Positions 15,346-38,239 are shown, counted from the first letter of the stretch. The stretch: 38,239 bases of DNA from Octopus sinensis (GCF_006345805.1 NW_021835760.1:1-38239), one strand, 5' to 3'. The notes: generated from the sequence alone by a model not told the origin. Numbers and translations are program-made.

Positions 15346-15917
15346 AAAAGAAGCGTTGATACTGGCATATTCGGGTCTTTTATTGGCCACAAGTAACTGT
15401 CCCTTATGAGGGTTTTCCTTTCATTTCCGTTTTGTTTTCTGCCATTTTCTTTCTTTTTTTCTGTTAAATTCTTCGCCAGGATTTCGGATGAGAAAGACAG
15501 ACATCTGGGGGAAAATGCTTAGCAGCATTTCGTCCGTCTTCATGCTTTGAGTTCAAATGCCGCCGAGGTCGACCTTGTCTTTCGGGTTCGATAAAATAAG
15601 TACCAGTTGAACAATGGTGCCGATGTAATCGACTTAACTCCTCCTAGCAACTCATGAGCACATGTCACAGTTTCTAATCGAATTTCTGATGAGAGTTACT
15701 TCCCTGGAATTAAAACACGAGTAGTCTCCCTTGTAATAACTGTTTTGTACTTTAAACTCTCTTACAAATTGTGTGCGCGTGGCTTAGGCTGTCAGCATCA
15801 TGATCGTAAGATTGTGGTTTCGATTCCTGGACCGGGCGACGCGTTGTGTTCTTGAGCAAAACACTTCATTTCACGTTGCTCCAGTCCACTCAGCTGGCAA
15901 AAATGTGTAACATTTAT

Positions 15918-16140
15918 AAGGCGGCGAGCTGGCAGAAACGTTAGCACGCCGGGCGAAATGCTTAGCGGTATTTCGTCTGCGTTACGTTGTGAGTTCAAAT
16001 TCCGCCGAGGTCGACTTCGCCTTTCATCCTTTCGGGGTCGATTAAATAAGTACCATTTATGCATTGGGGTCGATGTAATCGACTTAATGCCATTCTTTGT
16101 CCCCTCTGTGTTTAGCCCCTTGTGGGTAATAAAGAAATAG
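15918..16140 (+). mobile_element. SINE family B monomer
   Basis: aaggcggcgagctggcagaaacg ... gtgggtaataaagaaatag. Further fragments at ~14245-14330, 15500-15635, 16200-16295, 35818-36005 and 36905-36990. Confidence 0.9.
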
Positions 16141-16295
16141 CTATTATTACGGTTGTTAAAGTTCATGGATTTAACTATCTTCATAATTTTTTTTTCTTTT
16201 TTCTACTCTAGGCCACAAGTTCCGAAATTTTTAGGGAGTGGGGTCTATCGATTAGATCGACCCCAGTACGCAAAGTCAACCTCGGCAGAATTGAC

Positions 16296-18247: not shown

Positions 18248-18644
18248 TTAATGTATATACACATAATATCAGATCAGAATAACTTAGATCCGTGTACTAG
18301 TTTAACGCATACGACTACTTACCACAGCACCACCCGCCTATAATCGAATACTGTACGAATAGCTGGTATTTATTTAGTTGTCATTTATTTCCTCATTCAT
18401 TTTACGAAGTTTGTTGTTATTGTTGATGTTGTTACTGTTGCTGTGATTGCTTTTAAAAAGCAGTTTATTACATTTTATTTTATTTTTTAAGGAAATATTT
18501 AAATAGACAAAGATGAAATGAAACTGTCCAAATACATTTATCGCCCTTTGTACACAGTACTTGTAACAAAATTTCCCCGCCTTCTAGGGGGCGACACCAT
18601 ATTTGAGAAGCTCTGGTGTGGAGCTTTCTGTCTGTGATGTGAGG

Positions 18645-19062
18645 AAGGCACGAGCTGGCAGAAACGATAGCGCGCCGGGCGAAATGCTTAGCGGTATTTC
18701 GTCTGCCGTTACGTTCCGAGTTCAAATTCCGCCGAGGTCGACTTTGCTTTTCATCCATTCTGGGTCGATAAATTAAGTACCAGTTACGCACTGGGGTCGA
18801 TGTAATCGACTTAATACCTATGTCTGTCCTTGTTTGTCCCCTCTATGTTTATCCCCTTGTGGGTAATAAAGAAATAGGTATTTCGTCTGCCGTTACGTTC
18901 CGAGTTCAAATTCCGCCGAGGTCAACTTTGCCTTTCATCTTTTCGGGGTCGATAAATTAAGTACCAGTTACGCACTGGGGTCGATGTAATCGACTTAATA
19001 CCTATGTCTGTCCTTGTTTGTCCCCTCTATGTTTAGCCCCTTGTGGATAATAAAGAAATAGG
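18645..19062 (+). mobile_element. tRNA-derived SINE family B, dimeric copy
   Basis: Head gagcTGGCAGAAACG...GAGTTCAAATTCC. A second unit restarts at tatttcgtctgccg at 18879. Confidence 0.9.
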
Positions 19063-22944: not shown

Positions 22945-23209
22945 TCAAGAGGCTGAGGAGGTGTCTTTTTCCATCCATTGCATGACATAAGAAACACTAC
23001 TATCTTCTCCAGATGCTGTGATTAATGGTTTTGAATCTATGTGTTCATAACAATCTTCGTAGTTTTGCTTTTGGAAGCAGAATTCTTGTCCAGGTTTGTG
23101 GATATAACTTGAATTGGTGTCTTGCATGGAGCAACACTTATTATCTTCAGCAGGGACATTGCATACTGATATAGAACTTTTACTTGCGTTTCGACTGAGG
23201 ATCAGGTAT
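22945..23209 (-). other. Candidate exon-like segment, unassigned (possible terminal exon or decayed coding sequence)
   Basis: Good acceptor tattatcttttgtag| at 23209. The phase-2 frame is open for ~87 codons (YLILSRNASK...NYEDCYEHIDSKP...EKDTSSAS*). In phase 1, which matches exon 6, it reads D-T-stop. No family recognised. Confidence 0.3.
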
Positions 23210-23264
23210 CTACAAAAGATAATACATGAGTCTGTATGCATGTAGGATTCGATATCATTTGAAT

Positions 23265-23745
23265 ACAAACCCTCGAAACCTTACACAACTTAACCCGCAA
23301 GCTAAAGAAATTTGGAAAAATGAAAAATATAATTTAGAAGATTAAACTGAACATTACAAACCTAAAATGCCTAGAATTAATCTTAAGATCCATTAACTCG
23401 ACTTTTACACTAACCCTTCTCTTAAACTCATTTGCCCCTCTAAATCGGACCTTTGTAGGATAAGTGAGCGTATCACAGATAAGTACATACCCACACTTAG
23501 GAAGGTCATTCAGCTTAAATTATGGTCTAGTTCATATGAGGTAATCGACTGGTTCACTAAACTATCAGATAAAAAGAAAGTAAGGTTCAAGCAAATAGAC
23601 ATAACTCACTATTATATCTCAATAAACCCTACCCTTTTAAATAAGGCACTTATGTTTACTAAGAAAACCCCAGGACTAACAAGAGCAGAGGTAGACATTA
23701 TTCTAGTGGTGAGGAAATCAGTTATCAAATTCAAGGGGAAGTACT
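23265..23745 (+). mobile_element. Penelope-like element RT N-terminal relic
   Basis: In-frame translation NLED*TEHYKPKMPRINLKIH*LDFYTNPSLKLICPSKSDLCRISERITDKYIPTLRK...LWSSSYEVIDWF...FKQIDITHYYISINPTLLNKAL...IILVVRKSVIKFKGKYW matches the PLE RT pattern (RLINPxKS...W...VIxWF...FDIxxFYPSI). Contains stops. Confidence 0.8.
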
Positions 23746-24484
23746 GGGCACCTTCACTCTCCCTACTGCATGAAGATAGAATTCACTCTCATGAAGTTGT
23801 TACTGTTCTTTTTTATATGGATTATCATTGATACAAATGATTTCTCTTTCCATCGTGATTGTAAATTGAACTCTTTACTTCCTGTGCTATAACACAGTGC
23901 AATAAGGAAATGCATGAACCTTGTTTATATTCATTTTCAGGGAAATGAAGAAGTCTTTAATGTAAACTAACTCTAATCCCGTCTTCAATCATTCATTTCT
24001 GTTCAGTCACAGATTCACAACAGCACTGGCCCCTCCCCCCTATTATAAAACCATGTTTGAGAGGCATCAGCTGGTTTCCATAACTAACAAACCGTCACAG
24101 AATGGGATTCAGATTTTCAATTCTTGAAATTAAGTGGGTACCCTTCCAATCACACCCAGAGAATAATTACAAAGTTTCTATCAAATTAACTCCCAGGGCA
24201 CTGGTTGGCCCAGGGCTAAATTATGAGACATGCCAAAGGTATCATGAAGTGGGACTGAACTCAAAATATTGTGGTTGTAAAAGGTTTAGAAAAAAAAACT
24301 ATGTGATAAGATATGAAGAAAAATTGTAATTACCTATTTTCAGGACGAGAATTGTTTCATTAGAATTAATTATCTATATAAAATAAAGGAAAGGTTTCAT
24401 TAAAAGTCAATAAAGATCTCCTTAATACGCACGAACATAATTATTGATTTGAGTACGCTATATATACATACATACATATGTATG

Positions 24485-25395: not shown

Positions 25396-26523
25396 ATACA
25401 CAGAAAAAAAACAAGGAGAGAAACCAGGAGAGAAAAAATGTATGTAGTATATATATATATCTTCATACACACGGCAAGCTGCTTTCAGTTTCCGTCTACC
25501 AAATCCACTCACAAAGGTTTGGTCAGCTCGAGGTTATTATTGAACACTTGACCATTTGGTTGGGAAGTAAACTTCTTACCGCATAGCCGTGTGTGCTAAG
25601 AAGTTTAATGATGATGAGGATGATGATGAGACCCACACATGTCTATGTGTGGCCCTCATCATCATGTAGTGTCAGATTTGCAAGCTGACACGGGTTTCAT
25701 GTTTTGAGAATATATATGAACATATGTGTGTCTGTGTGTGTTAAATATTATCAACGACGTAACATTTGATTATTTTATTAAAAACTTCTCCTTGGCTTCC
25801 AACGAAATTTCCACTAAATGATAGCAACATACACACATGTCCGCGATGTGTAAAAGTGTGAGATTTTGCACAAGTATAAACAAACTGTGGTCATTTGCAA
25901 GTTTGTTGTGGCCTCTCCCCTCTCAATAATTACAATCCCATTTCCCCACTTTGAGTTTCAAATATTCTAAACCTTCAAACCATTATATTTAACTTTGCAC
26001 ATTGTTCTGTAATGGAAAGTTCAGACGATTTCATTGTTGATTCCTGGACATTGAAAAAATCACTTCTTGATTAGATTTCCGCTGGAAAATATCCTTCAGT
26101 TGACTGTTCATTACGTTATCTACTCAACCAGTTTATGTCTGCGTATATGCGATGAATATATGTGTGTATATACGTGTATGTATATATGTGTATGTCTTTA
26201 TGTGTTTGTGTTGTCTGTTTGTACGGATGTTGATGTCTGACATTTCAAAAAAATAAAAATACATTTAGCTCTTTTCATAGCTAACCTTCTCAACACTGCC
26301 TTTCGTTCTATGATACAAATTCCCTGTTTAAAGTGAGCTAAATTAAAACCTTCCATCAAAATTCCATGTAAAGTTTTGTCCCAAACGCCCATCTTAATAA
26401 TGGCAAAGCTATTTTACGAAATTCTTCCTAACTTTCGAAACTAATTGAAACAAAGACAAAGTATTTCAACAGAAATATGGTAAGAAACGGGTTGAACGAG
26501 ACAAGTTCAGATACACCAAATAC

Positions 26524-26623
26524 CTTTTGTTATTCGAGAGAATCCTGCCACCGAGGAATTGTGAGTGCTGCTGTCTTCGTTTCTATTGAATTTATACTCT
26601 GTGTAATTGCTGATCATACTTAT
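26524..26623 (-). CDS. Exon 6; starts in phase 0; completes repeat 3 (3' boundary uncertain)
   Basis: Acceptor ctatcatttcag|. Open only in phase 0: ISMISNYTEYKFNRNEDSSTHNSSVAGFSRITK. The donor AAG|gtattt is weak; read-through gives GIWCI and a stop at 26507-26509. Confidence 0.75.
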
Positions 26624-26696
26624 CTGAAATGATAGATTTGAAATATCGTTAAGATAACTCAGCTGTTTGTGATCTGATTATGAGTCGCCTCAGTTC

Positions 26697-26970
26697 CTTG
26701 TCAAGGGGTTGGTGTCGTTTGTCCGAGCATTTTTTATTTGTGTCAGTGTCATTTGGTGGAAATAGGGTGGGTAGGAGAAACACTAAATCCCTTCTTAGCT
26801 CAAACCTCATTTCAAGTCAATCAATCGATCTTGTCAAGGGGTTGGTGTCGTTTGTCCGAGCACTTTTTGGTGGGGTGAGGGGATTTAAGGAAAGAAACAT
26901 TAAACTCTTACTTCCCTCAAACCTCATCCAAAGTCAGTCAATCCATCAATCAATAGATCAATCAATCAAT
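26697..26970 (+). repeat. Two tandem ~133-bp units ending in (TCAA)n, probably LINE 3' ends
   Basis: An identical 33-mer (cttgtcaaggggttggtgtcgtttgtccgagca) occurs at 26697 and 26830. Both units end ctcaaacctcat..aagtca(a/g)tcaatc. Confidence 0.75.
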
Positions 26971-28094
26971 AATATTCATATCTAACAAGAGATTCTACTG
27001 CTTCTCCAAACCAGATATATCCCTCAACAGGTTATTAGCATTTTTGGTTTTAAGGAATAGAGCGACTTAACAATCTCTAATGACGATATGGATATGGATT
27101 TAGTACCGCAGATGAATAGAATGGTCAGCAATTATACACTGCGCCCATTGCTTGTAGATGTAAGGTATACCATTGCCATGAGTACCATCATCATCTTCAC
27201 CAAGATCAACAGTATCACTACCACCACCACCACCACCACCACCACCACCACTACTTCCACTACCGTTACCATAGTCCTACTTAACATCCAATTTCCATAG
27301 TGGAATAGGATGGACATTTGACAGGGCCTGACAAGATGGTAGGGTGGTCTATCATACACCAATGTCTACTTTGGTATGGTTTCTGTGGTTGGATGTCCTT
27401 CCTAATGCCAACCACTTTACAGAGTATACTGGGTGACCTTTTCGTTCATGGCACCAGCACTAGCAAGGATCACTTCATAACTCCAAGATTAAGGTCCTAA
27501 AGTAACCTTATAAGTGAGGGAGAATAGAAAAGGGAGTGAGTGGTGATTTCAAGTAGAAGGATGAGGGATGGCATATTGGAGAGTAAAGAAGCAAAATAAG
27601 CGAGGGATTTGCTTCAGGGTGAAGAAAAAGAGGAGAAGGATTTGAAAGGTGATAGGGTGGGTTGTGTTCTGGGGGTGGTGAAGGGAGGGTAAAGTCGAGG
27701 GCTATCCCTCATTATAAGTATGTTCCAGAAGAGAACATGGAGTAAAGTTGGCCCCACTGAAAGTGTGAACCCAGTCATTTTGAAGTATGAAATTCTCTTC
27801 CATGAAACATGCAGCCTGACTCCCTATCATCTCTACATGTTTTCACTTTAACATTCAGGTTTCTCGGTCAAATGTAATGCTTATTGATTCACATTGTTTT
27901 GAAATAAACGTAGATTATGTCATAGCTTCAAGATTTCGATGGCGTGATGGTTAATTGCTAGAATGAGATTGTAGGGTATGTGTGAGAGGTCAGATATGGA
28001 TGATTTGAGCATAAAACGGAGAATATTGGGGTTGGGTATGATATGGCCGTTTTAAATGCTAAAGGGCAAAAGTAGGTTAAGAAAATATATTTAC

Positions 28095-28321
28095 TTCATT
28101 GATTTTCAGAGATTCATTCTTAAAATGGAGATTTATGCTTGTGATTTCTTTGTCTTCATAGGTCTTCAGGTTAAAATATTTGATGAACTCATCTCCATAC
28201 ATACCGAAATTCTTCCATGTCAAATGATTAGTGAAAGATGATAACGTGTCTTGGATTAATTCTACGGAGAACGTTCGTTCATGTACCTCAGGAGAAATAA
28301 CTTTCAACAGCCATTTCTTGC
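28095..28321 (-). CDS. Exon 5; phase 1 to 0; first part of repeat 3
   Basis: Acceptor ttcatatttcag| and donor GAA|gtaaat. 227 nt: (G)KKWLLKVISPEVHERTFSVELIQDTLSSFTNHLTWKNFGMYGDEFIKYFNLKTYEDKEITSINLHFKNESLKINE. Confidence 0.87.
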
Positions 28322-28659
28322 CTGAAATATGAATTTAGAAAATATGACTTTTAAGTGTGTGATACATACATACATACATACATACATACATACATAAATA
28401 CATACATACATACATACATACATATGTACAAGCAATCTGTGAGCAGAACAGCAATAATATGCAAGATTTTTTCTCAAGTTTCAAATGTGAATTTGTCTGT
28501 GTTAACTACATCCCAAATATGAAACCTTGTGGAAGAGACATACATATATTCATATATATAGACATACACACATATAAAGATACACACACACACACACACA
28601 CACATAAATATATATATATATATATATATATGATAGATAAGTAGATAGATATAGATATA

Positions 28660-29840
28660 GTTAAATTGATTTGCCCATCTAAATCAGATATTTGTAAGAT
28701 TATTAAATTTATTATTAATAAATATATTTCTAGGCTTAAACAACGTACTAGTTCATGTTTGTGGTCAAATTCTTTGGACGTTATTGATTGGTTCTCTAAC
28801 ATTAATAGTAAACAACATACTAAGTTTATTCAGTTGGATATTTCTAATTATTAGTCAGCTATCAACCCTATCCTATCGAATAAAACTTTGCTTCTCGCTA
28901 TGAAAATTTCGGATCTATCTAGAAGTGATGTTGATATAATTCTAGTGGCTAGAAAAGCCTTTATTGAATTTGATGGTAAATATTGGACTAGAACTGGTAG
29001 ACCCAATGTTTTCAATATTAAAATGGGGTCAAGTGATTCGGTGCAAGTTACCGATTGAGCTGTTTTTATATTTTTTATTGCATACATAATGAATTTCCTT
29101 ATTTAGGAAGTGGATTATATAGAGATGATGCTCTTTTCACTGTATATAAATCTAGTATGGTTTATTTAGAAAAATATAGAAACATTCGTAATATATTCTT
29201 TCAGCATCTGTTCTTTCTATTAGTTTAGAAAATGAAGATACTAGGGTTAATTTTCTGGATATTACCATTGATCTACATAATGAATTATACCAACCTATTC
29301 ATAAGCCAAATGAATGCTTACGATAGATAAATAAAATCTCTAATAATATTAGTAGCATAATAAATTCAATAGTTAAGAATATATCAACTTGTATTTCGAG
29401 GCTTTCGGCTAATGGAGATATATATAAGCTAAATCAACCGTATCATACTATTGGGTTTTCTATATCATTAATTGTAGGATTGTTAAGATTTTTATTTATT
29501 TGAGTTCGTGCGAGTTATCCTCGATATCGTTATGATTTATTGATATATCTAATTTGGAAGAGGTATTTACCATGTGTATTAATAATTTTAATCTTTGTTG
29601 GAGTGTTTAGTAAAATAATGTTTTATTTATAAATCCAAAAAATAGTTTAATTAAAATAATAACATTGGAAGTTATAGATTAAAATGCATTATTGGAAGCT
29701 GGATATAAAGATGAGGCTTACTATATCTTGAATCATCTTAGTAATAATAAAGATCTAGAAAATTTTAGAATTAGAGAGATGTTGAAACTTCATGAAAGGA
29801 ATAAGAAAATTATAAATTTATATGGAAATAATAAAAGTAG
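28660..29840 (+). mobile_element. Penelope-like element RT relic (motifs through thumb), interrupted by a ~237-bp insert
   Basis: LICPSKSDICKI...LWSNSLDVIDWF...FIQLDISNY*SAI...KMGSSDSVQV...GLYRDDAL...VNFLDITIDL...YQPIHKPN...NQPYH, resuming at 29683 as NALLEAGYKDE. Contains stops and frameshifts. Confidence 0.85.
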
Positions 29841-29842
29841 AT

Positions 29843-30015
29843 AAAGACACCATACTATGGGATATGCCAATATACACAGATAAAGAAATTAAAGCCAATA
29901 GGCCAGATATAGTTGTCAGAGGTTATCAAGAAAAAGATACTTTCTAATTGGTGTATCAATACCAACAGATGGCAACGTTTGTCTAAAAGAAATAGAGAAA
30001 TTTTCAAAATACAAT
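29843..30015 (+). mobile_element. Restriction-like endonuclease fragment of an R4/Dong-type non-LTR retrotransposon
   Basis: KDTILWDMPIYTDKEIKANRPDIVV, a -1 frameshift, then RYFLIGVSIPTDGNVCLKEIEKFSKY. This matches the RLE pattern LWD...RPDIV...D/G-V-x-IP...KExEKxxKY. Confidence 0.75.
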
Positions 30016-30304
30016 ACAATTTATATTCTATGTAAATATATGGTGGTTCCCCAGTATGACTGCTGTTATTCAACTAATACTGGCTAAAGAGTTAACACAA
30101 TGACTTAAAAATTTCAAATGCGTTAAACACAAAATTTATTAAATATGCGACTCGTACGTATCTCTTTCTTTAAATTTCCTTAATTTCAATTTAAAATATT
30201 ATTAATCCTGCTTTGAATTCTCACAGAATGATTATTTCCCTTTTAATAGCCGTGACCACAAGAGGGACCACATGGTTTGATTTAGTTGTTCAATGAAATC
30301 TTAC

Positions 30305-30398
30305 CTTTTTTAACTTTACAAGAACATTTCATTGAATTTGTCCAATGTATGTCAACACAACCATATTCTTCTCCCGTAAGCATCTTTGTCATGACAAC
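30305..30398 (-). CDS. Exon 4; phase 0 to 1; completes repeat 2
   Basis: Acceptor tcatttttcag| and donor AAG|gtaaga. 94 nt: VVMTKMLTGEEYGCVDIHWTNSMKCSCKVKK plus 1 nt. It parallels exon 2 (V-x-[V/M]...Y-x-C...C). Confidence 0.87.
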
Positions 30399-30784
30399 CT
30401 GAAAAATGATTTTTTAAATTGTTTTAAAGTTGATTAGTTATATGACATGTTTAAATTAATACAACCATCTACGTTGATTGAAAGGGGTGGCCAGGTGGCT
30501 TTGTGCCAAGGCTAAAGTATGATAGAGGGACAAGTATAGTTGTCTTGCTACAGAAGAGATACATGACTACCACACATTATATAAGGGTAGTTGGGAGGGC
30601 CTAAATGTGATAGTGATACAATACCAGGTAAGATTCTTAGGAGATAGGAAGGGGAGAATACAGACGGGATACAGACTGTTGGTTAATGAAGGGACGGAGT
30701 GAGCTGGGTCTTTTGTAAAAGGGGAGTGTAACTCAGATGGTTAGAGATGGGTTACTCTCTCTCTCTATCTCTCTTTCTCCGTAT

Positions 30785-30831
<47 letters not shown>

Positions 30832-30833
30832 AT

Positions 30834-30895
<62 letters not shown>

Positions 30896-30957
30896 TATTA
30901 CGGAGATGCACTCGCATAGCAAGTGATTTGATCTGAGATCGTGTGCTGAAACGAAAA

Positions 30958-31250
30958 CAATTACAGCGTGGAATGTGTTTGCAAGCCATTTAAGAAACAC
31001 ACAAAAGCCGTTCGATTCACTTCAACATTTAAGTTTAATTTGACAAAATATTTTCGTCGCTAAAATCTGTGACCTGTTCACTGACAAAAATCCGTGCTGC
31101 ATCTGAGCAGCACGGATTTTCATCAGTGAACAGGTCACGGTCTTAAAGCGACGAAAATATTTTGACAAATTAAACTTAAATGTTGAAGTGAATCGAACGG
31201 CTTTTGTGTGTTTCTTAAATGGCTTACAAACACCTTCCACGCTGCAATTG
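30958..31250. repeat. 293-bp imperfect palindrome (inverted Penelope-type terminal repeat), each arm carrying a hammerhead-like motif
   Basis: Arms 30958-31100 and 31107-31250 with a 6-nt spacer (atctga) and about 10 differences. Motifs are at 31039-31088 (-) and 31119-31169 (+). Confidence 0.9.
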
Positions 31251-31290
31251 TATATATACATATATATATATATATGTCTCAAAGACAGAC

Positions 31291-31329
<39 letters not shown>

Positions 31330-31399
31330 AAAAAGAAAGAAAGAAAGAAAGAAAGAACGAAAAAGCAAACACAGAATTCAAGAGGGTGAAGCTACTTAC

Positions 31400-31632
31400 T
31401 TTGGTCATGTCAAAAGGTTTTTTAGTGCCATTGAATTCTATTTCAATCTCATTGATGTTCTCGTTTGGAATATCGAAAAAATTAGTGAAAGCGGAGACGT
31501 AAGCCGACTCTTCGAGTGATACAATTACTGAAGAGTTCCTTTCACCGCCAGTCACTCTAAGAGTAAAAATTATTGTTTCGTAATCGTTTACATATTTGGA
31601 TTGATAGGTCATTTCTATATTCCATGTGGAAT
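31400..31632 (-). CDS. Exon 3; phase 1 to 0; first part of repeat 2
   Basis: Acceptor ttttcttctttcttctctag| and donor AAA|gtaagt. 233 nt: (D)STWNIEMTYQSKYVNDYETIIFTLRVTGGERNSSVIVSLEESAYVSAFTNFFDIPNENINEIEIEFNGTKKPFDMTK. Confidence 0.9.
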
Positions 31633-31698
31633 CTAGAGAAGAAAGAAGAAAATAATTAAAGGAAAAAAGAACAATAACAAACGTGGTGTAGTGTCTGT

Positions 31699-32105
31699 TG
31701 GCAGAAACGTTAGCGCGCTGGGCGAAATGCTTAGCGGTATTTCGTCTGCCGTTACGTTCTGAGTTCAAATTCCGCCGAGGTCGACTTTGCCTTTCATCCT
31801 TTCGGGGTCGATAAATTAAGTAGCAGTTACGCACTGGGGTCGATGTAATCGACTTAATCAATTTGTCTTTCCTTGTTTGTCTCCTCTATGTTTAGCCCCT
31901 TGTGGGTTGTAAAGAAATAGGTATTTCGTCTGCCGTTACGTTCTGAGTTCAAATTCCGCCGAGGTCGACTTTGCCTTTCATCCTTTCGGGGTCGATAAAT
32001 GAAGTACCAGTTACGCACTGGGGTCGATGCAATCGACTTAAAAACCCTTTGTCTGTCCTTGTTTGTCTCCTCTATGTTTAGTCCCTTGTGGGTAGTAAAG
32101 AAATA
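31699..32105 (+). mobile_element. SINE family B, dimeric copy, intronic
   Basis: Same structure as 18645-19062, with the junction at 31914-31927. Confidence 0.9.
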
Positions 32106-32234
32106 TGTAATTCATTAACAAAAATGTGTCCAGCAATAAAAGAGAAAAAAATGGTGAATTACTTGACATTTTGAGATTTGAATTATTCTTCAACAGTAAG
32201 TGACTGATTTTGTGAACATTGACCTTTGATCTTT

Positions 32235-32600
32235 TATCCTGTTTCAATCATTAGTCTGCGGCCATGCTGGGGCACCACCGTAAAGAAATTTTAGTCGAAT
32301 GAATTAAGCCCAGGACTGATTTTATCTTTCAAAGTGTCTTTTGCTGAGCTGCTAAGTTACAGGGTTGTAAACACACAAACACCACATTGCAAGCAGTGGT
32401 GGAGTAAAACACAGACACAAAGACACACACACACACACACATGACAGTATTCTTTTAGTTTCCGTATCCAAATCCACTCAAGAATCTTTGGTCATCCCAA
32501 GGCTACAGTAGAAGACACTGGCCTAAAGTGACCCACACTGGGTCTGAAATCGGAACCATGTGATTAGGAGGAAAGTTTCTTATCATACAGCCACACCTAG
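32235..32600 (-). mobile_element. SINE family A copy (diverged), intronic
   Basis: Tail gcggccatgctggggcacc and head ggtctgaaatcggaaccatg. Confidence 0.78.
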
Positions 32601-32847
32601 CCATGCCTTTCATTACCATATTTTTGCTGAAATCTGCTTTGTTTCAATTAATTTTGAGAATAATGAAGAATATATTAAATAATTTAGCTGTTATTAATCT
32701 GGTGTCAGATTAATTAAGATGCAATTTCAATGAAAGGTTTTCACTAAGGTAACTTCAACCCTTTTCATACCAACTCACCTGAGACCATGCCTGGATCTAC
32801 AAACTTACAGTTTTCATCTCCATAACCTGGTAAGATTGCTTGGATAC

Positions 32848-33515
32848 TTTTAAGCTGTATATGCCATCCCCCTCAGTCCTGCATTAGTTGAGGGAAGTCT
32901 TCGAGGAGGCATCCAGTGTCTCTGATGAGTTGATCTACATATATTGTGTTTGGATGACCAGCTTGAGTACAGCATTGCTGTCATGTCCATAGCAGTAGGT
33001 CACTTGCTACCTCTTCTATAGCTCGCCAACTTTTAAGCTGTATATGCCATCCCCCGCAGTCCTGCATTAGTTGAGGGAGGTCTTCGAGGCGGCATCCAGT
33101 GTCTCTGATGAGTTGATCTACATATATTGTGTTTTGATGACCAGCTTGAGTACAGCCATGCTTTCATGTCCATAGCAGTATGTCATTTGCTACCTCTTCT
33201 ATAGCTCGACAACAATGTCCTTCAAAGTGCAAGCATCTTTCCCTTATAATGTTGGAAGCAGGCAGCAGATCTCCGTACAGCTGTTTCTTGGTCGGATAAG
33301 TCCTCCAAGATATGTTTAAGACTGCTCTTAATATTTGGGTGAAAGTTCCATCTTGCTTGGATTCCAGTGTTTTGGTAAGTGTCCAGGCTGTTGTTCCATA
33401 TAAAAGGACTGAGTCTACCACAGTATAGGAAAATCTTCTCTGACAGGCTTGATTTCCAGGCAAAACCCAGTTTGTTTAGGGCCGACCATGCTTTGGCTAC
33501 CCAAGTTTTTACATC
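32848..33515 (-). mobile_element. RTE-clade LINE ORF2 C-terminal fragment with an internal 183-bp tandem duplication
   Basis: AKAWSALNKL, then TVVDSVLLYGTTAWTLTKTLESKQDGTFTQILRAVLNISW...LYGDL...IRERCLHFEGHC...ILLW...YVDQLIRDTGC. This is typical post-RT sequence of RTE elements. Confidence 0.85.
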
Positions 33516-33561
33516 CTTGTCAGTTGACTTGCATTAATTTACTGTTTTAAAGTGATCTAAA

Positions 33562-33727
33562 CAGCGCAGGAGTGGCTGTGTGGTAAGTAGCTTGCTTACC
33601 AACCACATGGTTCCGGGTTCAGTCCCACTGAGTGGCACCTTGTGCAAGTGTCCTCTGCTATAGCCTCGGGCTGACCAAAGCCTTGTGATTGGATTTGGTT
33701 GACGGAAACTGAAAGAAGCCCGTCGTA

Positions 33728-33822
<95 letters not shown>

Positions 33823-34045
33823 TGTGTGTGTTTGTGTGTCTGTGTTTGTTCCCCTAGCATTGCTTGACAACCGATGCTGGTATGTTTACGTCGCCGTCAC
33901 TTAGCGGTTCGGAAAAAGAGAGCAATAGAATAAGTACTGGGCTTACAAAGAATAAGTGTCGGGGTCGATTTGCTCGACTAAAGGCGGTGCTCCAGCAGAG
34001 CGGCATTCAAATGACTGAAACAAGTAAACGAGTAAAAGAGTAAAC
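33562..34045 (+). mobile_element. SINE family A full copy, intronic
   Basis: gcgcaggagtggctgtgtgg ... gagtaaaagagtaaa. Confidence 0.9.
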
Positions 34046-34799
34046 TATAATCTTGATCAAAGTTTTATATTAATTTGTTTCAGACACCAGCTTTAGAATG
34101 AGAAAATCTTTTTACTAAATTTTTCATTATTTTTAAAATTAATTAAACGGCAATATATTTGTAACACTAAGTCAGAAATATCTTTATCGATAATAAGATC
34201 ATTTTCTTGAAGAGTCTAAAGAAACAGGTCTCTGTAGAGAGCTGAACCCCAGGGATTTTATGAACCCATCAAAACATTCTGGAATGTTTCATGATGCCTT
34301 TAAAGGAGCAAATCTTCAGCATTCCTTTCGATCTGTCACTGCCTCTAACAAACCAATGTCAAAGATGACTTGCTGAAAAATATCGGAAGACATCATAACA
34401 TAGTTTAGGAATCAAGCCAAAATACTTCTCGTCAGTATTACCATATATAATATTATTCTGCAGTGTCTGCGAGTTTTGAATTTAAACATTCCAAATTCAA
34501 ATTTGAGGAAGCTTACCTGTATGACACTGTGGGTAAGAGACTTTTACTATAGCACCTGGCTGAGCCAAGCTTTGTGAATGGATTTGATAGACTGCAATTG
34601 GAAGAAGTCTGTCATAGGTATACACATATATATATTTGTATATGTATATATGATTGTGTGTATGTGTGTGTCTGTGTGTGTGTGTGTGAGAGAGAGAGAG
34701 GAAGTAAATACATTCAGTCATAGAAAACCCTTCTTCAATGAATTTCTAGTGATTCATAATATAGAGAAACAATATAAGCAGTATCTTTTATAAACTTAC

Positions 34800-34899
34800 C
34801 ATTTCTCCAGACACAAATATGGCCAGGACCTGGAGGCTCTATTCCAATTCTATACATACAGGAATATATTTTGTTATTTGCCATATTCTGCACTGTTAC
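34800..34899 (-). CDS. Exon 2; phase 0 to 1; completes repeat 1
   Basis: Acceptor ttttctctttttcttttactattag| and donor G|gtaagt. 100 nt: VTVQNMANNKIYSCMYRIGIEPPGPGHICVWRN plus 1 nt. Confidence 0.88.
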
Positions 34900-35159
34900 C
34901 TAATAGTAAAAGAAAAAGAGAAAATTATGTCACCAAGAATTACATGGCTTTAGACAGGGGTCACTTTGTTCTGGATCCAGTAATTATGCAGATGTGAATC
35001 ACCTAAGTTATCCATCAATTCAGCAATTTTATCGCTACTTCAACTGAAATGTTCTTTCAGATATTGATAGTCATACAACACGAAGTTTACAGAAACTCAG
35101 CAATTCAAATACAAGGTGCATTGCAGTGGTTTTCAGACTTTTTCAGGAGAGACTTCTTC

Positions 35160-35532
35160 TTTTTACTTCTTTTACTTGTTTCAGTCATTTGACTACGGCC
35201 ATGCTGGAGCACCGCCTTTAGTCGAGCAAATCGAGCCCGGGACTTATTCTTTGTAAGCCCAGTACTTATTCTATCGGTCACCTTTGCCGAACCGCTAAGT
35301 GACGGGGACGTAAACACACCAGCATCGGTTGTCAAGCAATGCTAGGGGGACAAACACAGACACACAAACACACACGCATACATATATATATATACGTATA
35401 TACGACAGGCTTCTTTCAGTTCTGTCTACCAAATCCACTCGCAAGGCATTGGTCGGCCCGGGGCTATAGCAGGGCCGACCAATGCCTTGTGAGTGGATTG
35501 GTAGACGAAAACTGAAAGAAGCATGTTGTATA
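35160..35532 (-). mobile_element. SINE family A copy with its head replaced by a fold-back inversion
   Basis: Minus-strand tail and body from 35160 to 35470. The segment 35472-35532 is the inverted copy of 35399-35459. Confidence 0.85.
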
Positions 35533-35743
35533 TATGTATTGGACATTTATTAGTGTTAAAGAAGTATTTTAAATTTGGATTCACAAGATCCGATATAGAT
35601 TTTGGTAGGTGTCTCTGTGTTGATATTGTTGTTAGTGATATTTGTGCTGCTTCAATTTGAGACTACCTTTGCTCGGTATAATGTAGCCTCGGTGTTACAT
35701 CGGCTGTCCAGTGGGCATTCATTTCTAATCCTGCATGAAGATA

Positions 35744-35790
<47 letters not shown>

Positions 35791-36368
35791 ATATGTGTGT
35801 GTATATATGTAATTATTAGCGGTATTTTGTCTGCCGTTACTTTCTGAGTTCAAATTCCGCCGAGGTCGACTTTGCCTTTCATCCTTTCGGGGTCGATAAA
35901 TAAAGTACCAGTTTCGCACTGGAGTCGGTGCAAACGACTTAATCCGTGTGTCTATCCTTGTTTGTCCACTCAATGTCTAGCCCCTTGTGGGCAGTAATGA
36001 AATATATACGTATTGTATATAAGCGTGTGTGTGTGTTTGTATGTGTGTGTTTGTATCTGTGATTGTCGCTCGCCTCACCAGCACTTGACAACCTGTGTAG
36101 ATGTTTTTACTTCCCCGGAACTTAGTGGTTCACCAAAAGAGATTGATAGAATAAGTACCAGGATTTAAAACAAATATTACTTGTTAAATTTGTTCAACTA
36201 ACCTCCTTCAAGGTGGTGCCCCACCATGGTCGCTGTGTAATGACAGAAAAACATGTAGAAGAGAAAAGATGACAATAGAAGCCGTTGAAACATTTAAAAT
36301 GTAAACTTTGAATGAAGCAGGTAAACTTCTTTCAAAATGGAAACAAGAGAAATAAACGTTTCGCTCAC

Positions 36369-36574
36369 CTTTTTCTCCAACCCAAATTCCCCTTCAGTGA
36401 AAAAAGCTATCCAATTGAGTTCATTCCAATGCAATGAAAGAAAGAACGATGCATTTGAAGTTCTAGAATATTTGCTAAACGTAAAATTGGCGTAATAATG
36501 AGGTGCAGCACGATAAGAACTTTTAAAATCGTCATTTATGTCGCTACGTGTAACTTCAAAAGTCCAGCGATCCA
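36369..36574 (-). CDS. Exon 1 (within window) of a tandem PLAT/LH2-like repeat protein; phase 1 to 0
   Basis: Acceptor ttttctcttttttatttctag| and donor AAG|gtgagc. 206 nt, stop-free: xDRWTFEVTRSDINDDFKSSYRAAPHYYANFTFSKYSRTSNASFFLSLHWNELNWIAFFTEGEFGLEKK. Phase-compatible with the next exon. Confidence 0.88.
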
Positions 36575-37095: not shown

Positions 37096-38239
37096 CTTTA
37101 TTAAAGCAGCAGAAAATTCAACATGAGTTTCTCGTTGCCGGTCACCAGACAGTTTTTGCTAGAATATATATATATATATAATGTGTTTTTTTTTAATGGG
37201 CTAAGGGTTTGAGTGGAGCTGATGAACTTGAGGGCTGCACTAGGTTCTCCTCTGACTTGGCAGGGTTTCTTCAGCTGGATAACGCCAATCACCCCAGGTG
37301 CATAATGAGTGCTTTTACGCACCTTTGTCATGGGTGCCATTGATATGACACCAGGAATGACCACAACTACGATTCATGGGTCGGTGCCATTCACATGGCA
37401 CCAACAACAACCCTGACTACGATTCATGAGTGCCATTTGCATTTAATCTTTTGAAATTTCCTCCCATTCTTAAAAAATGCTGTTCACAATTTTGTACAGA
37501 ATTTTGTTTAAATTTCTCTCGTTAATTGAGAAAATTTCACTTGATTAAGACTTTTTACATATGGCATTAGTACACCACTTCTTAATTTATTTCATAGAAC
37601 TTCGTGTCATTGGTATCTTTGAGTTATCTCCCTTAGCTCATTAAAAAAAAAACATTAATTAAACAGAATATACTGAGTCAAAATTATTATAACTCTTTGA
37701 CTATATGTAAAAATCTTTGTCACTCGGAGTAACTAAATAACCTTAACGAGGTCTAACAAACTGAAGCATATCCATTGTTGTCCTCTTGCCTGCAAATTAA
37801 GACCAGGCTTTACTTTTAATAATTATTTAATTAATTATTTCGAGGAATTAATCCCAATGTCTTAAAATTATTTCTCCTTTTCCTTCAGACGCCAACAATT
37901 GCCACTAGCTTTTTCTTTTCTTCATCTAAACATTCCAGTAAATTTTTTGCATACACGAATCCTTATATTATTTATGCAAAACCTTAGACTCAGGGTAACA
38001 CTACCGATTTAGCCATTTTAGAAAATATTTACTTTTATATACATTTTCATATATCAAGATTAGTTGGAAAATTTATTGAATATTTCAAATAATGATTTGT
38101 GATTGACGCCAGCTTGTCTTTCTCGTTACTGACTACACAACTGTGAATTGAACCTGTAAGCATAAGATAATGTGTCTTTTCTGAGGATTGAATGGCAGCA
38201 ATAAGATTTGAACTCCTAATATTGATCTTTGTAGTTGAG

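What the first reader, a model, noticed from the sequence alone, without database searches (positions are those of the whole stretch)
26524..36574. Hidden spliced gene encoding three tandem, highly diverged, apparently extracellular PLAT/LH2-like domains built from a repeating two-exon module
Seen: six minus-strand exons with canonical splice sites alternate phase 1-0 (206, 233, 227 nt) and 0-1 (100, 94, 100 nt). They splice into 960 nt with no stop. Each ~105-aa repeat starts with W-x-hydrophobic-x-hydrophobic, has a 'ExxxIxhxF' strand, and ends '(K/E)-V/I-x-V/M...Y-x-C/F'. Eight N-x-S/T sequons occur in ~320 aa, and repeats 1 and 2 end in Cys pairs. Established: PLAT domains have this strand order (..lGel..I.l.hd...W.l..V.v.....Y.F.C). 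The secreted pancreatic-lipase PLAT starts RWRYKV and ends in a disulfide, whereas the multi-PLAT protein LOXHD1 is intracellular. Inference: this is a secreted or surface protein, possibly lipase-related, whose PLAT-like unit was multiplied by phase-1 exon-pair duplication and diverged until the GTD and WFL motifs were lost. A glycosylated multi-PLAT protein is an unusual architecture. The ORF track shows only fragments of it.
Basis: partly seen in the sequence, partly recalled or inferred. Interest (0 to 1): 0.8.

Follow-up and report, generated by a model that had tools for sequence, protein, structure and literature searches.

The report
Octopus gene with tandem PLAT-like domains
The six exons are a real octopus gene, already listed in public databases as "uncharacterized", that encodes a probably secreted protein built from repeated lipase/lipoxygenase-type (PLAT-like) beta-sandwich domains, a fold that sequence searches miss; the gene family was found only in octopods.

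Summary
Six minus-strand exons with AG/GT boundaries (206/100, 233/94, 227/100 nt; phases 1-0/0-1) splice into 960 stop-free nt, or 319 aa.

The gene is not hidden. It is the orthologue (99% aa; locus about 98% nt) of RefSeq "uncharacterized protein LOC115224696" of Octopus sinensis. It belongs to a family of about 27 sequence clusters found only in Octopus and Argonauta.

The full protein has a signal peptide and four two-exon modules, not three. The first module lies just beyond the window. Most paralogues add stalk mini-exons, a transmembrane helix and a tyrosine-bearing tail.

No sequence method links any module to PLAT, or the modules to one another. AlphaFold2 nevertheless predicts four 8-stranded beta-sandwiches. 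Module 2 modelled alone (pLDDT 84.5) hits only PLAT-bearing proteins in its top 50 PDB matches (probability 1.00, TM 0.55-0.71).

The fold call, the extracellular location and the exon-pair duplication are therefore supported. A lipase relationship is not: there is no catalytic domain. In this copy the stalk acceptor is mutated, no TM exon is found, and the tail exon is a relic, so the product is probably soluble.

Verdict: a new variant of a known kind, of moderate interest.

The parts
36369..36574 (-). Module 1, exon A (206 nt, phase 1 to 0). Encodes DRWTFEV...GLEKK, predicted strands beta1-beta5.
   Evidence: Identical, flanks included, to O. sinensis L001 19130-19335. Strand positions.
34800..34899 (-). 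Module 1, exon B (100 nt, phase 0 to 1). Encodes VTVQNMANNKIYSC...HICVWRN, predicted strands beta6-beta8, with the family-invariant Cys pair around a variable loop.
   Evidence: Five nt / four aa differences from O. sinensis are concentrated here.
31400..31632 (-). Module 2, exon A (233 nt, phase 1 to 0). Encodes DSTWNIEM...PFDMTK.
   Evidence: Identical to L001. Part of the module modelled alone.
30305..30398 (-). Module 2, exon B (94 nt, phase 0 to 1). Encodes VVMTKMLTGEEYGC...CSCKVKK, with an invariant Cys pair.
   Evidence: PLAT-only fold matches for module 2.
28095..28321 (-). Module 3, exon A (227 nt, phase 1 to 0). Encodes GKKWLLKVISPE...SLKINE. This is the most conserved module in the family.
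   Evidence: Same 227-nt exon in the O. bimaculoides paralogue.
26524..26623 (-). Module 3, exon B (100 nt, phase 0 to 1). Encodes ISMISNYTEYKF...GFSRITK. Reading through its donor gives GIWCI-stop (26523-26510), the same ending as paralogue models P0002 and P0004.
24335..24374 (-). The single remaining stalk mini-exon (IINSNETILVLKI). Its ancestral 42-nt phase 1-1 unit has an acceptor AG that now reads AT. The canonical AG lies 2 nt downstream and shifts the frame to an immediate stop (...SRITKDN*).
   Evidence: The paralogue has three such 42-nt mini-exons.
22948..23226 (-). Relic cytoplasmic-tail exon (RYLILSRNASKSS...). It is still open and is 79% identical to the tail of the O. bimaculoides orthologue.
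   Evidence: E=5e-40. No TM exon between 24335 and 23226.

Best explanation
The region holds exons 5-10 of a real protein-coding gene. It is the orthologue of Octopus sinensis LOC115224696 and belongs to an octopod-restricted, clustered gene family.

The encoded protein is a signal peptide followed by four beta-sandwich modules of about 100-110 aa. Each module is encoded by one exon pair (phase 1-0, then 0-1). The internal intron always falls just before predicted strand beta6. This indicates that the array grew by duplication of a symmetric phase-1 cassette.

The modules adopt the 8-stranded PLAT/LH2 sandwich known from the C-terminal domain of pancreatic and lipoprotein lipases and the N-terminal domain of lipoxygenases. 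They have lost every sequence hallmark of that family.

In most paralogues the array is displayed on the cell surface by a glycosylated stalk and a single TM helix, with a short tail carrying conserved tyrosine motifs. In this copy the stalk and TM part has decayed, so the product is most likely a secreted, N-glycosylated, disulfide-stabilised soluble form.

By analogy with PLAT domains, which dock proteins onto lipid surfaces or protein partners, I infer that the array is an extracellular binding module. On that reading the membrane-bound paralogues would act as receptors or adhesion molecules, and this copy as a soluble binder.

What is shown: the exons, orthology, architecture, family range and fold prediction. 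What is inferred: secretion, glycosylation, disulfides, ligand binding and any receptor role.
For: Exons and reading frame.

Orthologue at 99% aa identity and 100% coverage. The locus is 96-98% identical in DNA to O. sinensis CM016884.1.

The family is found only in Octopus and Argonauta: 27 representatives among 1.84 billion proteins.

Gene structure of the paralogue: 55 | 194/91 | 206/100 | 248/94 | 227/100 nt, with phases 0-1 | (1-0/0-1) x4. The fourth module and the signal-peptide exon were mapped in L001.

Of the 33 family models of at least 300 aa, 25 have a hydrophobic N-terminus and 23 a strong TM helix followed by R/K. The weak Pfam hits are all TM-segment families.

AF2 whole protein: pLDDT 70.8, pTM 0.65, with 8 strands per module. 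Its probability-1.00 PDB hits are LPL, 12-LOX, 8R-LOX and Rab6IP1.

AF2 module 2 alone: pLDDT 84.5, pTM 0.75. All top 50 PDB hits are PLAT-bearing proteins, at prob 1.00, TMq 0.55-0.71 and full-length alignment. LPL identities differ between the two searches (14-16% versus 8-9%), which implies that a second domain also matches PLAT.

Cys pairs are invariant in modules 1 and 2. Four sequons are conserved.

Stalk and TM decay.
Against: No sequence method supports PLAT membership. Pfam gives nothing at E<=10 for 26 family members. PDB profile searches give only chance hits. hhalign against a small profile of real PLAT domains gives P=0.25-0.5.

The modules are not significantly similar to one another.

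The structures are predictions from shallow alignments of 15-18 closely related sequences. Foldseek E-values are modest (7e-4 to 1e-2). Modules 1 and 3 and the N-terminal module were not searched individually.

No transcript or junction evidence could be obtained. The one Logan contig examined is genomic.

The RefSeq C-terminus needs a non-canonical acceptor. The tail exon is better conserved than the ectodomain (79% versus about 61%), which would fit a still-used membrane isoform that I failed to find.
Confidence: 0.75

Rival explanations
1. The modules are generic 8-stranded beta-sandwiches that are not homologous to PLAT. They could be convergent, or derived from another superfamily such as C2 or Ig-like. 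On this reading the PLAT resemblance is only geometric.
For: All sequence-based tests fail. The whole-model search also lists C2-rich ferlins and E-Syt2 and Ig-type receptors, at low probability (0.2-0.33). The coral 8R-LOX PLAT entry title itself calls its domain 'C2-like' (2fnq).
Against: For the isolated module all 50 best PDB matches are PLAT proteins at probability 1.00, with TMq up to 0.71 across the whole module. No Ig, C2 or CUB entry appears among them. The best local hhalign matches, though non-significant, fall at the equivalent strands: h-x-V-x-...-T-G-x-x-Y in beta6-beta7.
Confidence: 0.15
2. This copy is a decaying, non-functional gene. It would be a recent pseudogene of a membrane receptor, whose ectodomain exons are still open only because the loss is recent.
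For: Stalk acceptor AG is mutated, two of three stalk mini-exons and the TM exon are missing, and the tail exon is unreachable in frame. The conserved tail motif DIEQLYTQPIKY is present only out of frame. The tail exon carries indels between the window and O. sinensis. Exon 2 carries 5 differences, 4 of them amino-acid changes.
Against: All six module exons and their splice sites are intact. Five of the six module exons are identical or differ by one synonymous base from O. sinensis, while introns differ by about 1.3%. TM-less models also exist for other family genes, one of them as an alternative isoform of a TM-bearing gene (P0005 versus P0044). A soluble form is therefore a normal family product.
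Confidence: 0.12
3. The gene is lipase-related: a lipase whose catalytic exons lie upstream, or a derivative of a lipase gene's PLAT exons.
For: Lipoprotein lipase is the single best fold match for module 2 (6u7m, E=7e-4). From memory, lipase PLAT domains are likewise extracellular and carry a disulfide near their C-terminal end, as modules 1 and 2 do.
Against: The full-length orthologue has only a signal peptide and a fourth PLAT-like module upstream of these exons. No alpha/beta-hydrolase or any other Pfam domain occurs in any family member. Lipoxygenase and Rab6IP1 PLAT domains match equally well.
Confidence: 0.03

Closest known systems
PLAT/LH2 domain (Pfam PF01477) of pancreatic lipase, lipoprotein lipase and PLRP2
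   Same: Predicted 8-stranded beta-sandwich of about 110 aa. It is extracellular, and a Cys pair lies near the C-terminal strands. LPL is the best fold match (6u7m, prob 1.00, TMq 0.63).
   Different: No detectable sequence similarity and no attached alpha/beta-hydrolase domain. There are four tandem copies instead of one, and the family members carry a TM anchor and a cytoplasmic tail.
N-terminal PLAT domain of animal lipoxygenases (5-, 12-, 15-LOX; coral 8R-LOX)
   Same: Highest TM-scores for module 2 (8ghc 0.70-0.71, 4qwt 0.70, rmsd 3.4-4.1 A).
   Different: Lipoxygenases are cytosolic with a single PLAT domain that docks onto membranes using Ca2+. Here the domains are behind a signal peptide, tandem, glycosylation-ready and without a catalytic partner.
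LOXHD1 (tandem PLAT-repeat protein of hair cells)
   Same: An array of tandem PLAT-type domains with no enzymatic domain.
   Different: From general knowledge, LOXHD1 is intracellular, has 15 repeats recognisable by Pfam, and is conserved across animals. This family is extracellular, has four cryptic repeats and is restricted to octopods. No direct comparison was run.
Lineage-specific type I immune-type or adhesion receptors with tandem beta-sandwich ectodomains (for example LILR/PirB-like Ig receptors)
   Same: Signal peptide, several tandem beta-sandwich domains each bounded by phase-1 introns, a single TM helix, and a short tail with tyrosine motifs. Also clustered, fast-diverging paralogues and soluble variants.
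   Different: The ectodomain fold is PLAT-like, not Ig. PirB matches the whole model only at probability 0.1-0.23. No signalling function has been tested.

Membership tests
PLAT/LH2 domain family (Pfam PF01477) | Significant match to the PF01477 profile | tested here: not met
   No PLAT hit at E<=10 for the window protein, 18 aligned relatives or 8 further relatives, including Argonauta.
PLAT/LH2 domain family (Pfam PF01477) | 8-stranded beta-sandwich of about 110-120 aa that superposes on solved PLAT domains | tested here: met
   Module 2 model (pLDDT 84.5): all top 50 PDB hits are PLAT proteins, prob 1.00, TMq 0.55-0.71. The whole protein gives the same classes. Modules 1 and 3 and the N-terminal module each show 8 strands but were not searched alone.
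PLAT/LH2 domain family (Pfam PF01477) | Conserved sequence motifs (G-T-D after beta1, h-D-n-x-G, W-F/Y-L before beta6, Y-x-F-x-C) | tested here: not met
   hhalign of each module profile against polycystin-1, 11R-LOX and Rab6IP1 PLAT sequences gives P=0.25-0.5. Only the V-x-V...T-G-x-x-Y stretch aligns in register.
PLAT/LH2 domain family (Pfam PF01477) | Lipid, membrane or partner-protein binding through loops at one end of the sandwich | not testable with these tools
   Needs liposome or ligand binding assays.
Pancreatic lipase / LPL family | N-terminal alpha/beta-hydrolase catalytic domain preceding the PLAT domain | tested here: not met
   The full-length orthologue has only a signal peptide plus a fourth PLAT-like module upstream. 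No lipase Pfam hit in any member.
LOXHD1-like tandem PLAT proteins | Cytosolic protein made of many Pfam-recognisable PLAT repeats | tested here: not met
   A signal peptide and TM topology place the repeats outside the cell. The repeats are not Pfam-recognisable. The tandem arrangement itself is shared.
Immunoglobulin-superfamily receptors | Ig-fold ectodomains with a B-F strand disulfide and a core Trp | tested here: not met
   No Ig entry among the top 50 for module 2. PirB matches the whole model at prob 0.1-0.23. The Cys pairs lie in the last two strands, both in exon B.
C2 domain | 8-stranded C2 sandwich topology with Ca2+-binding loops | tested here: inconclusive
   Ferlin and E-Syt2 C2 proteins appear only for the whole model, at prob 0.2-0.33, and none appears in the top 50 for module 2.

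The most novel reading that the evidence does not exclude
Octopods evolved their own family of cell-surface receptors, with soluble forms. The ectodomain is an array of cryptic PLAT-like domains rather than Ig, LRR or lectin domains. It is coupled to phosphotyrosine-type tail motifs, and the disulfide-bracketed loops diversify rapidly. This would be a lineage-specific recognition system (immune, chemotactile or cell-cell) built on a fold otherwise used to dock enzymes onto lipids.
Probability: 0.2. Interest if true: 0.75.

Novelty: new variant of a known kind. Interest (0 to 1): 0.5.

Why it matters
The gene itself is already in RefSeq, but it and all its relatives are labelled 'uncharacterized' and carry no domain annotation.

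Recognising four PLAT-like sandwiches gives a structural handle on an octopod-only, clustered family of surface and secreted glycoproteins. Such lineage-restricted families are candidates for cephalopod-specific biology.

It also shows the PLAT fold in an unusual setting: extracellular, tandem, with no enzyme attached, and anchored by a TM helix with tyrosine motifs.

It is a clean example of domain-array growth by duplication of a phase-1 two-exon cassette, after which sequence similarity was erased while the fold and the intron position were kept.

The function remains untested, so the practical value is a concrete, testable hypothesis rather than a discovery of mechanism.

Tried and rejected
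- Pfam on the spliced protein and on 26 relatives gave no domain, only weak TM-segment families.
- phmmer and hmmsearch of the protein and of each module profile against PDB sequences gave only chance hits: haemagglutinin-esterase 0.17, Der p 3 1.1, NLRP4 0.11, L27 0.41.
- tblastn of each module against the window found no cross-hits and no further module elsewhere in the window.
- hhalign between modules gave probability <1%. Five of the six best alignments are nonetheless roughly in register.
- hhalign of the modules against a mini-profile of real PLAT sequences harvested from PDB alignments was not significant. Two bacterial alpha-toxin entries appeared unasked in the table and were not used.
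- For transcript evidence, the Logan contig carrying relative P0031 turned out to be genomic, a single exon with intron flanks, so it gives no junction support.
- The literature holds no paper containing the LOC, XP or UniProt identifiers, and nothing relevant on PLAT domains in octopus.
- The identity of the top whole-model hit, 9nw3 chain 3A, could not be established from the paper.
- I first thought the TM had been lost by a 1-nt frameshift inside a long TM exon. I rejected this once the paralogue showed that the stalk mini-exon and the TM exon are separate.
- Sequon enrichment as evidence for secretion was rejected: 8 observed against 4.9 expected, p about 0.1.
- Exon-versus-intron divergence against O. 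sinensis is too small a sample to prove selection: 6/960 against about 116/9100.
- The reverse-transcriptase-like intronic ORF has no Pfam hit.


Full report
**1. The observation.**
- 36574-36369 (206 nt)
- 34899-34800 (100 nt)
- 31632-31400 (233 nt)
- 30398-30305 (94 nt)
- 28321-28095 (227 nt)
- 26623-26524 (100 nt)

Each is preceded by a pyrimidine-rich tract and AG and is followed by GTAAG/GTGAG/GTAAA/GTATT. Joined, they give 960 nt with no stop, 319 aa and eight N-x-S/T sequons. Phases alternate 1-0 and 0-1. Each module begins W-x-h-x-h, and modules 1 and 2 end with two cysteines.

Two qualifications apply:
- Eight sequons is not significantly above the 4.9 +/- 1.9 expected from this Asn/Ser/Thr-rich composition.
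- The modules do not detect one another by tblastn or by profile-profile comparison (hhalign probability <1%).

**2. It is a real gene and already annotated.** The spliced protein matches RefSeq XP_029651412.2, 'uncharacterized protein LOC115224696 [Octopus sinensis]' (489 aa), at 99% identity over 100% of its length (E=3.5e-211). The window aligns with that locus (CM016884.1) at 96-98% nucleotide identity. It therefore comes from the same or a sister species. The window's own product is not in the protein collection.

Five of the six exons are identical to O. sinensis or differ by one synonymous base. Introns differ by about 1.3%.

A profile search adds paralogues in O. sinensis, O. bimaculoides and O. 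vulgaris. An exhaustive HMMER scan of 1.84 billion representative proteins finds only 27 clusters. Every named cluster is from Octopus or Argonauta hians, and three short clusters from sequencing-run assemblies carry no name. None carries a precomputed Pfam domain. No paper in the library mentions the identifiers.

**3. Full architecture.** Mapping the O. sinensis protein on its locus gives this order:
- a signal-peptide exon
- an N-terminal module
- in this gene model only, a 38-residue insert that AlphaFold2 predicts as disordered
- the three modules seen in the window

The second exon of the N-terminal module lies about 150-240 nt beyond window position 38239.

Reconstructing the exons of the O. 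bimaculoides paralogue LOC106880589, so that they translate exactly to the protein, gives 55 | 194/91 | 206/100 | 248/94 | 227/100 nt. The phases are 0-1 | (1-0/0-1) four times. The two-exon cassette is therefore real and conserved between paralogues and species. It occurs four times, not three.

In the AlphaFold2 model the internal phase-0 intron of every module falls immediately before the sixth strand.

After the modules, the paralogue has three 42-nt phase 1-1 stalk mini-exons (D-E-I-x-F-N-E-T...), a 57-nt TM exon and a tail exon.

Among the 33 family models of at least 300 aa:
- 25 start with a hydrophobic signal-like segment ending ...Q/H-A-T.
- 23 have one strong TM segment (Kyte-Doolittle 2.8-3.9 over 19 residues). 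It is followed by R/K and a 40-196-aa tail with conserved tyrosine motifs.

The weak Pfam hits in the family are all TM-segment families. The modules are therefore extracellular.

**4. The fold.** Sequence methods are silent:
- Pfam gives nothing at E<=10.
- PDB sequence and profile searches give only chance hits.

AlphaFold2 on the 18-sequence family alignment gives an all-beta model (pLDDT 70.8, pTM 0.65) in which each of the four modules has eight strands. In the Foldseek search of the PDB, the matches with probability 1.00 are lipoprotein lipase, 12-lipoxygenase, coral 8R-lipoxygenase and Rab6IP1. These are all PLAT-bearing proteins.

Module 2 modelled alone (window residues 102-210, 15 sequences) gives pLDDT 84.5 and pTM 0.75, again with eight strands. 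Its 50 best PDB matches are LPL, pancreatic lipase and PLRP2, 5-, 12-, 15- and 8R-lipoxygenases, and Rab6IP1. All are at probability 1.00, with TM-scores of 0.55-0.71 normalised to the module and alignments spanning the whole module. Sequence identity is 7-14% and E-values run from 7e-4 to 1e-2.

LPL aligns at 14-16% identity in the whole-protein search but at 8-9% with module 2. At least one other domain therefore also matches PLAT.

As a last sequence test I harvested real PLAT sequences (polycystin-1, 11R-LOX, Rab6IP1) from PDB alignments and compared them with each module profile. Nothing is significant (P=0.25-0.5).

The fold call is thus supported directly for module 2. For modules 1 and 3 it is supported by architecture only. 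Homology to PF01477 is not demonstrated.

**5. This copy has lost its anchor.** Downstream of exon 6 the window keeps only one stalk mini-exon (24374-24335).
- Its ancestral acceptor AG reads AT, and a new AG 2 nt downstream shifts the frame into an immediate stop.
- The RefSeq model keeps the frame only by using the non-canonical site. It then reads the next exon out of frame, ending ...KIDT-stop.
- No TM exon is detectable between 24335 and 23226.
- The tail exon (23226-22948) is still open and is 79% identical to the tail of the O. bimaculoides orthologue LOC106880587, which retains stalk, TM and tail.
- The family's distal motif DIEQLYTQPIKY survives only out of frame.

The product therefore ends shortly after module 3 and should be soluble. 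TM-less models exist for other family genes too, one as an alternative isoform of a TM-bearing gene. A soluble form is thus not in itself a sign of death. Even so, a decaying copy cannot be excluded.

**6. Mechanism.** Shown:
- a signal-peptide-led array of four PLAT-like sandwiches with no enzymatic domain
- conserved Cys pairs in the last two strands of modules 1 and 2
- four conserved sequons
- membrane-anchored paralogues with tyrosine-motif tails
- clustering of paralogues on a few chromosomes

Inferred: the array is an extracellular binding device. PLAT domains in lipases, lipoxygenases and polycystin dock onto lipid surfaces or partner proteins. The TM paralogues would then be receptors or adhesion molecules, and this copy a secreted binder. 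The ligand and tissue are unknown.

The lipase idea fails because there is no catalytic domain anywhere in the family.

**7. Comparison and novelty.** The closest known units are the PLAT domains of extracellular lipases and of lipoxygenases. The closest architecture is LOXHD1's tandem PLAT array, but that protein is cytosolic and its repeats are recognisable by Pfam.

This family differs in three ways. It is extracellular and TM-anchored, it is cryptic at sequence level, and it is restricted to octopods. I rate it a new variant of a known kind. It is interesting for cephalopod biology and for domain evolution, but the gene is already annotated and the function is untested. Interest 0.5.

Noticed in passing
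window 22948-24374 (minus strand): The C-terminal part of the gene is degenerate. One stalk mini-exon remains and its ancestral acceptor is mutated (AG to AT). No TM exon is present. The cytoplasmic-tail exon is still open and 79% identical to the O. bimaculoides orthologue's tail. The conserved distal motif DIEQLYTQPIKY is present near 22.9 kb only in another frame. The RefSeq model's C-terminus (…EKFNSNETILVLKIDT) needs a non-canonical acceptor.
   Followed up: yes
window 34800-34899 (module 1 exon B): Five of the six exonic differences from O. sinensis fall in this 100-nt exon, and they change four amino acids (T/K, R/T, I/Y, G/A). Three of the four lie in the loop between the two invariant cysteines, which is also the most length- and sequence-variable stretch in the family alignment. 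This may be a diversifying loop.
   Followed up: partly
L003 and family proteins P0003, P0007, P0008, P0011, P0014, P0016, P0023, P0028: The cytoplasmic tails of TM-bearing paralogues carry conserved acidic-x-Y-x-N/E-x motifs (EIYANMNP, DIYENLD, DCYEHID). They also carry a DIEQLYTQPIK unit, which is repeated many times in Argonauta P0023. This suggests phosphotyrosine-type signalling or sorting.
   Followed up: no
window 26510-26523; proteins P0002, P0004: Reading through the donor of exon 6 gives GIWCI-stop. Two paralogue models in O. sinensis and O. vulgaris end with the same read-through peptide (GIWCF, GIWCI). This could be a conserved intron-retention or early-polyadenylation route to soluble isoforms, or a shared annotation artefact.
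   Followed up: no
L001 10290-10406 and 11654-11740 (P0001 residues about 83-120): The O. sinensis model has a 38-residue insert between the two exons of the N-terminal module. It is made of an extended exon plus an extra exon and is absent from all paralogues. AlphaFold2 predicts it as disordered (pLDDT 30-39). It may be a gene-model artefact.
   Followed up: partly
window 32850-33182 (intron 2): There is a tandem duplication of about 183 bp (two near-identical ORF fragments, MDM[TK]A[MW]LYSSWSSKHNICRST...). It is present once in O. sinensis, since L001 22472-22656 aligns to both copies. Next to it, at 33164-33475, is an ORF that from memory resembles the region C-terminal to LINE reverse transcriptases. 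That ORF has no Pfam hit.
   Followed up: partly
window 15798-16184, 18480-18791, 31780-32111, 35725-35976 (minus strand): There are repeated copies of a short interspersed element whose translation reads ...RNWY[FL]IYRPRKDERQSRPRRNLNSERNGRRNT.... The same element is abundant in L001. Introns and the rest of the window are otherwise dominated by TA/CA-type microsatellites. No other gene-like ORF was seen in positions 1-22000.
   Followed up: no
protein P0005 (O. bimaculoides LOC106873066 isoform X2): UniRef names this family member 'Vitellogenin domain-containing protein'. Pfam finds no such domain in it or in any relative, so the name looks like an automatic mis-annotation.
   Followed up: partly
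whole window: The window's own protein is not in the 15-billion-protein collection. The best hit is 99% identical and comes from O. sinensis, although O. vulgaris paralogues are present. If the window is from O. vulgaris or another unannotated assembly, this gene may indeed lack a model there.
   Followed up: no
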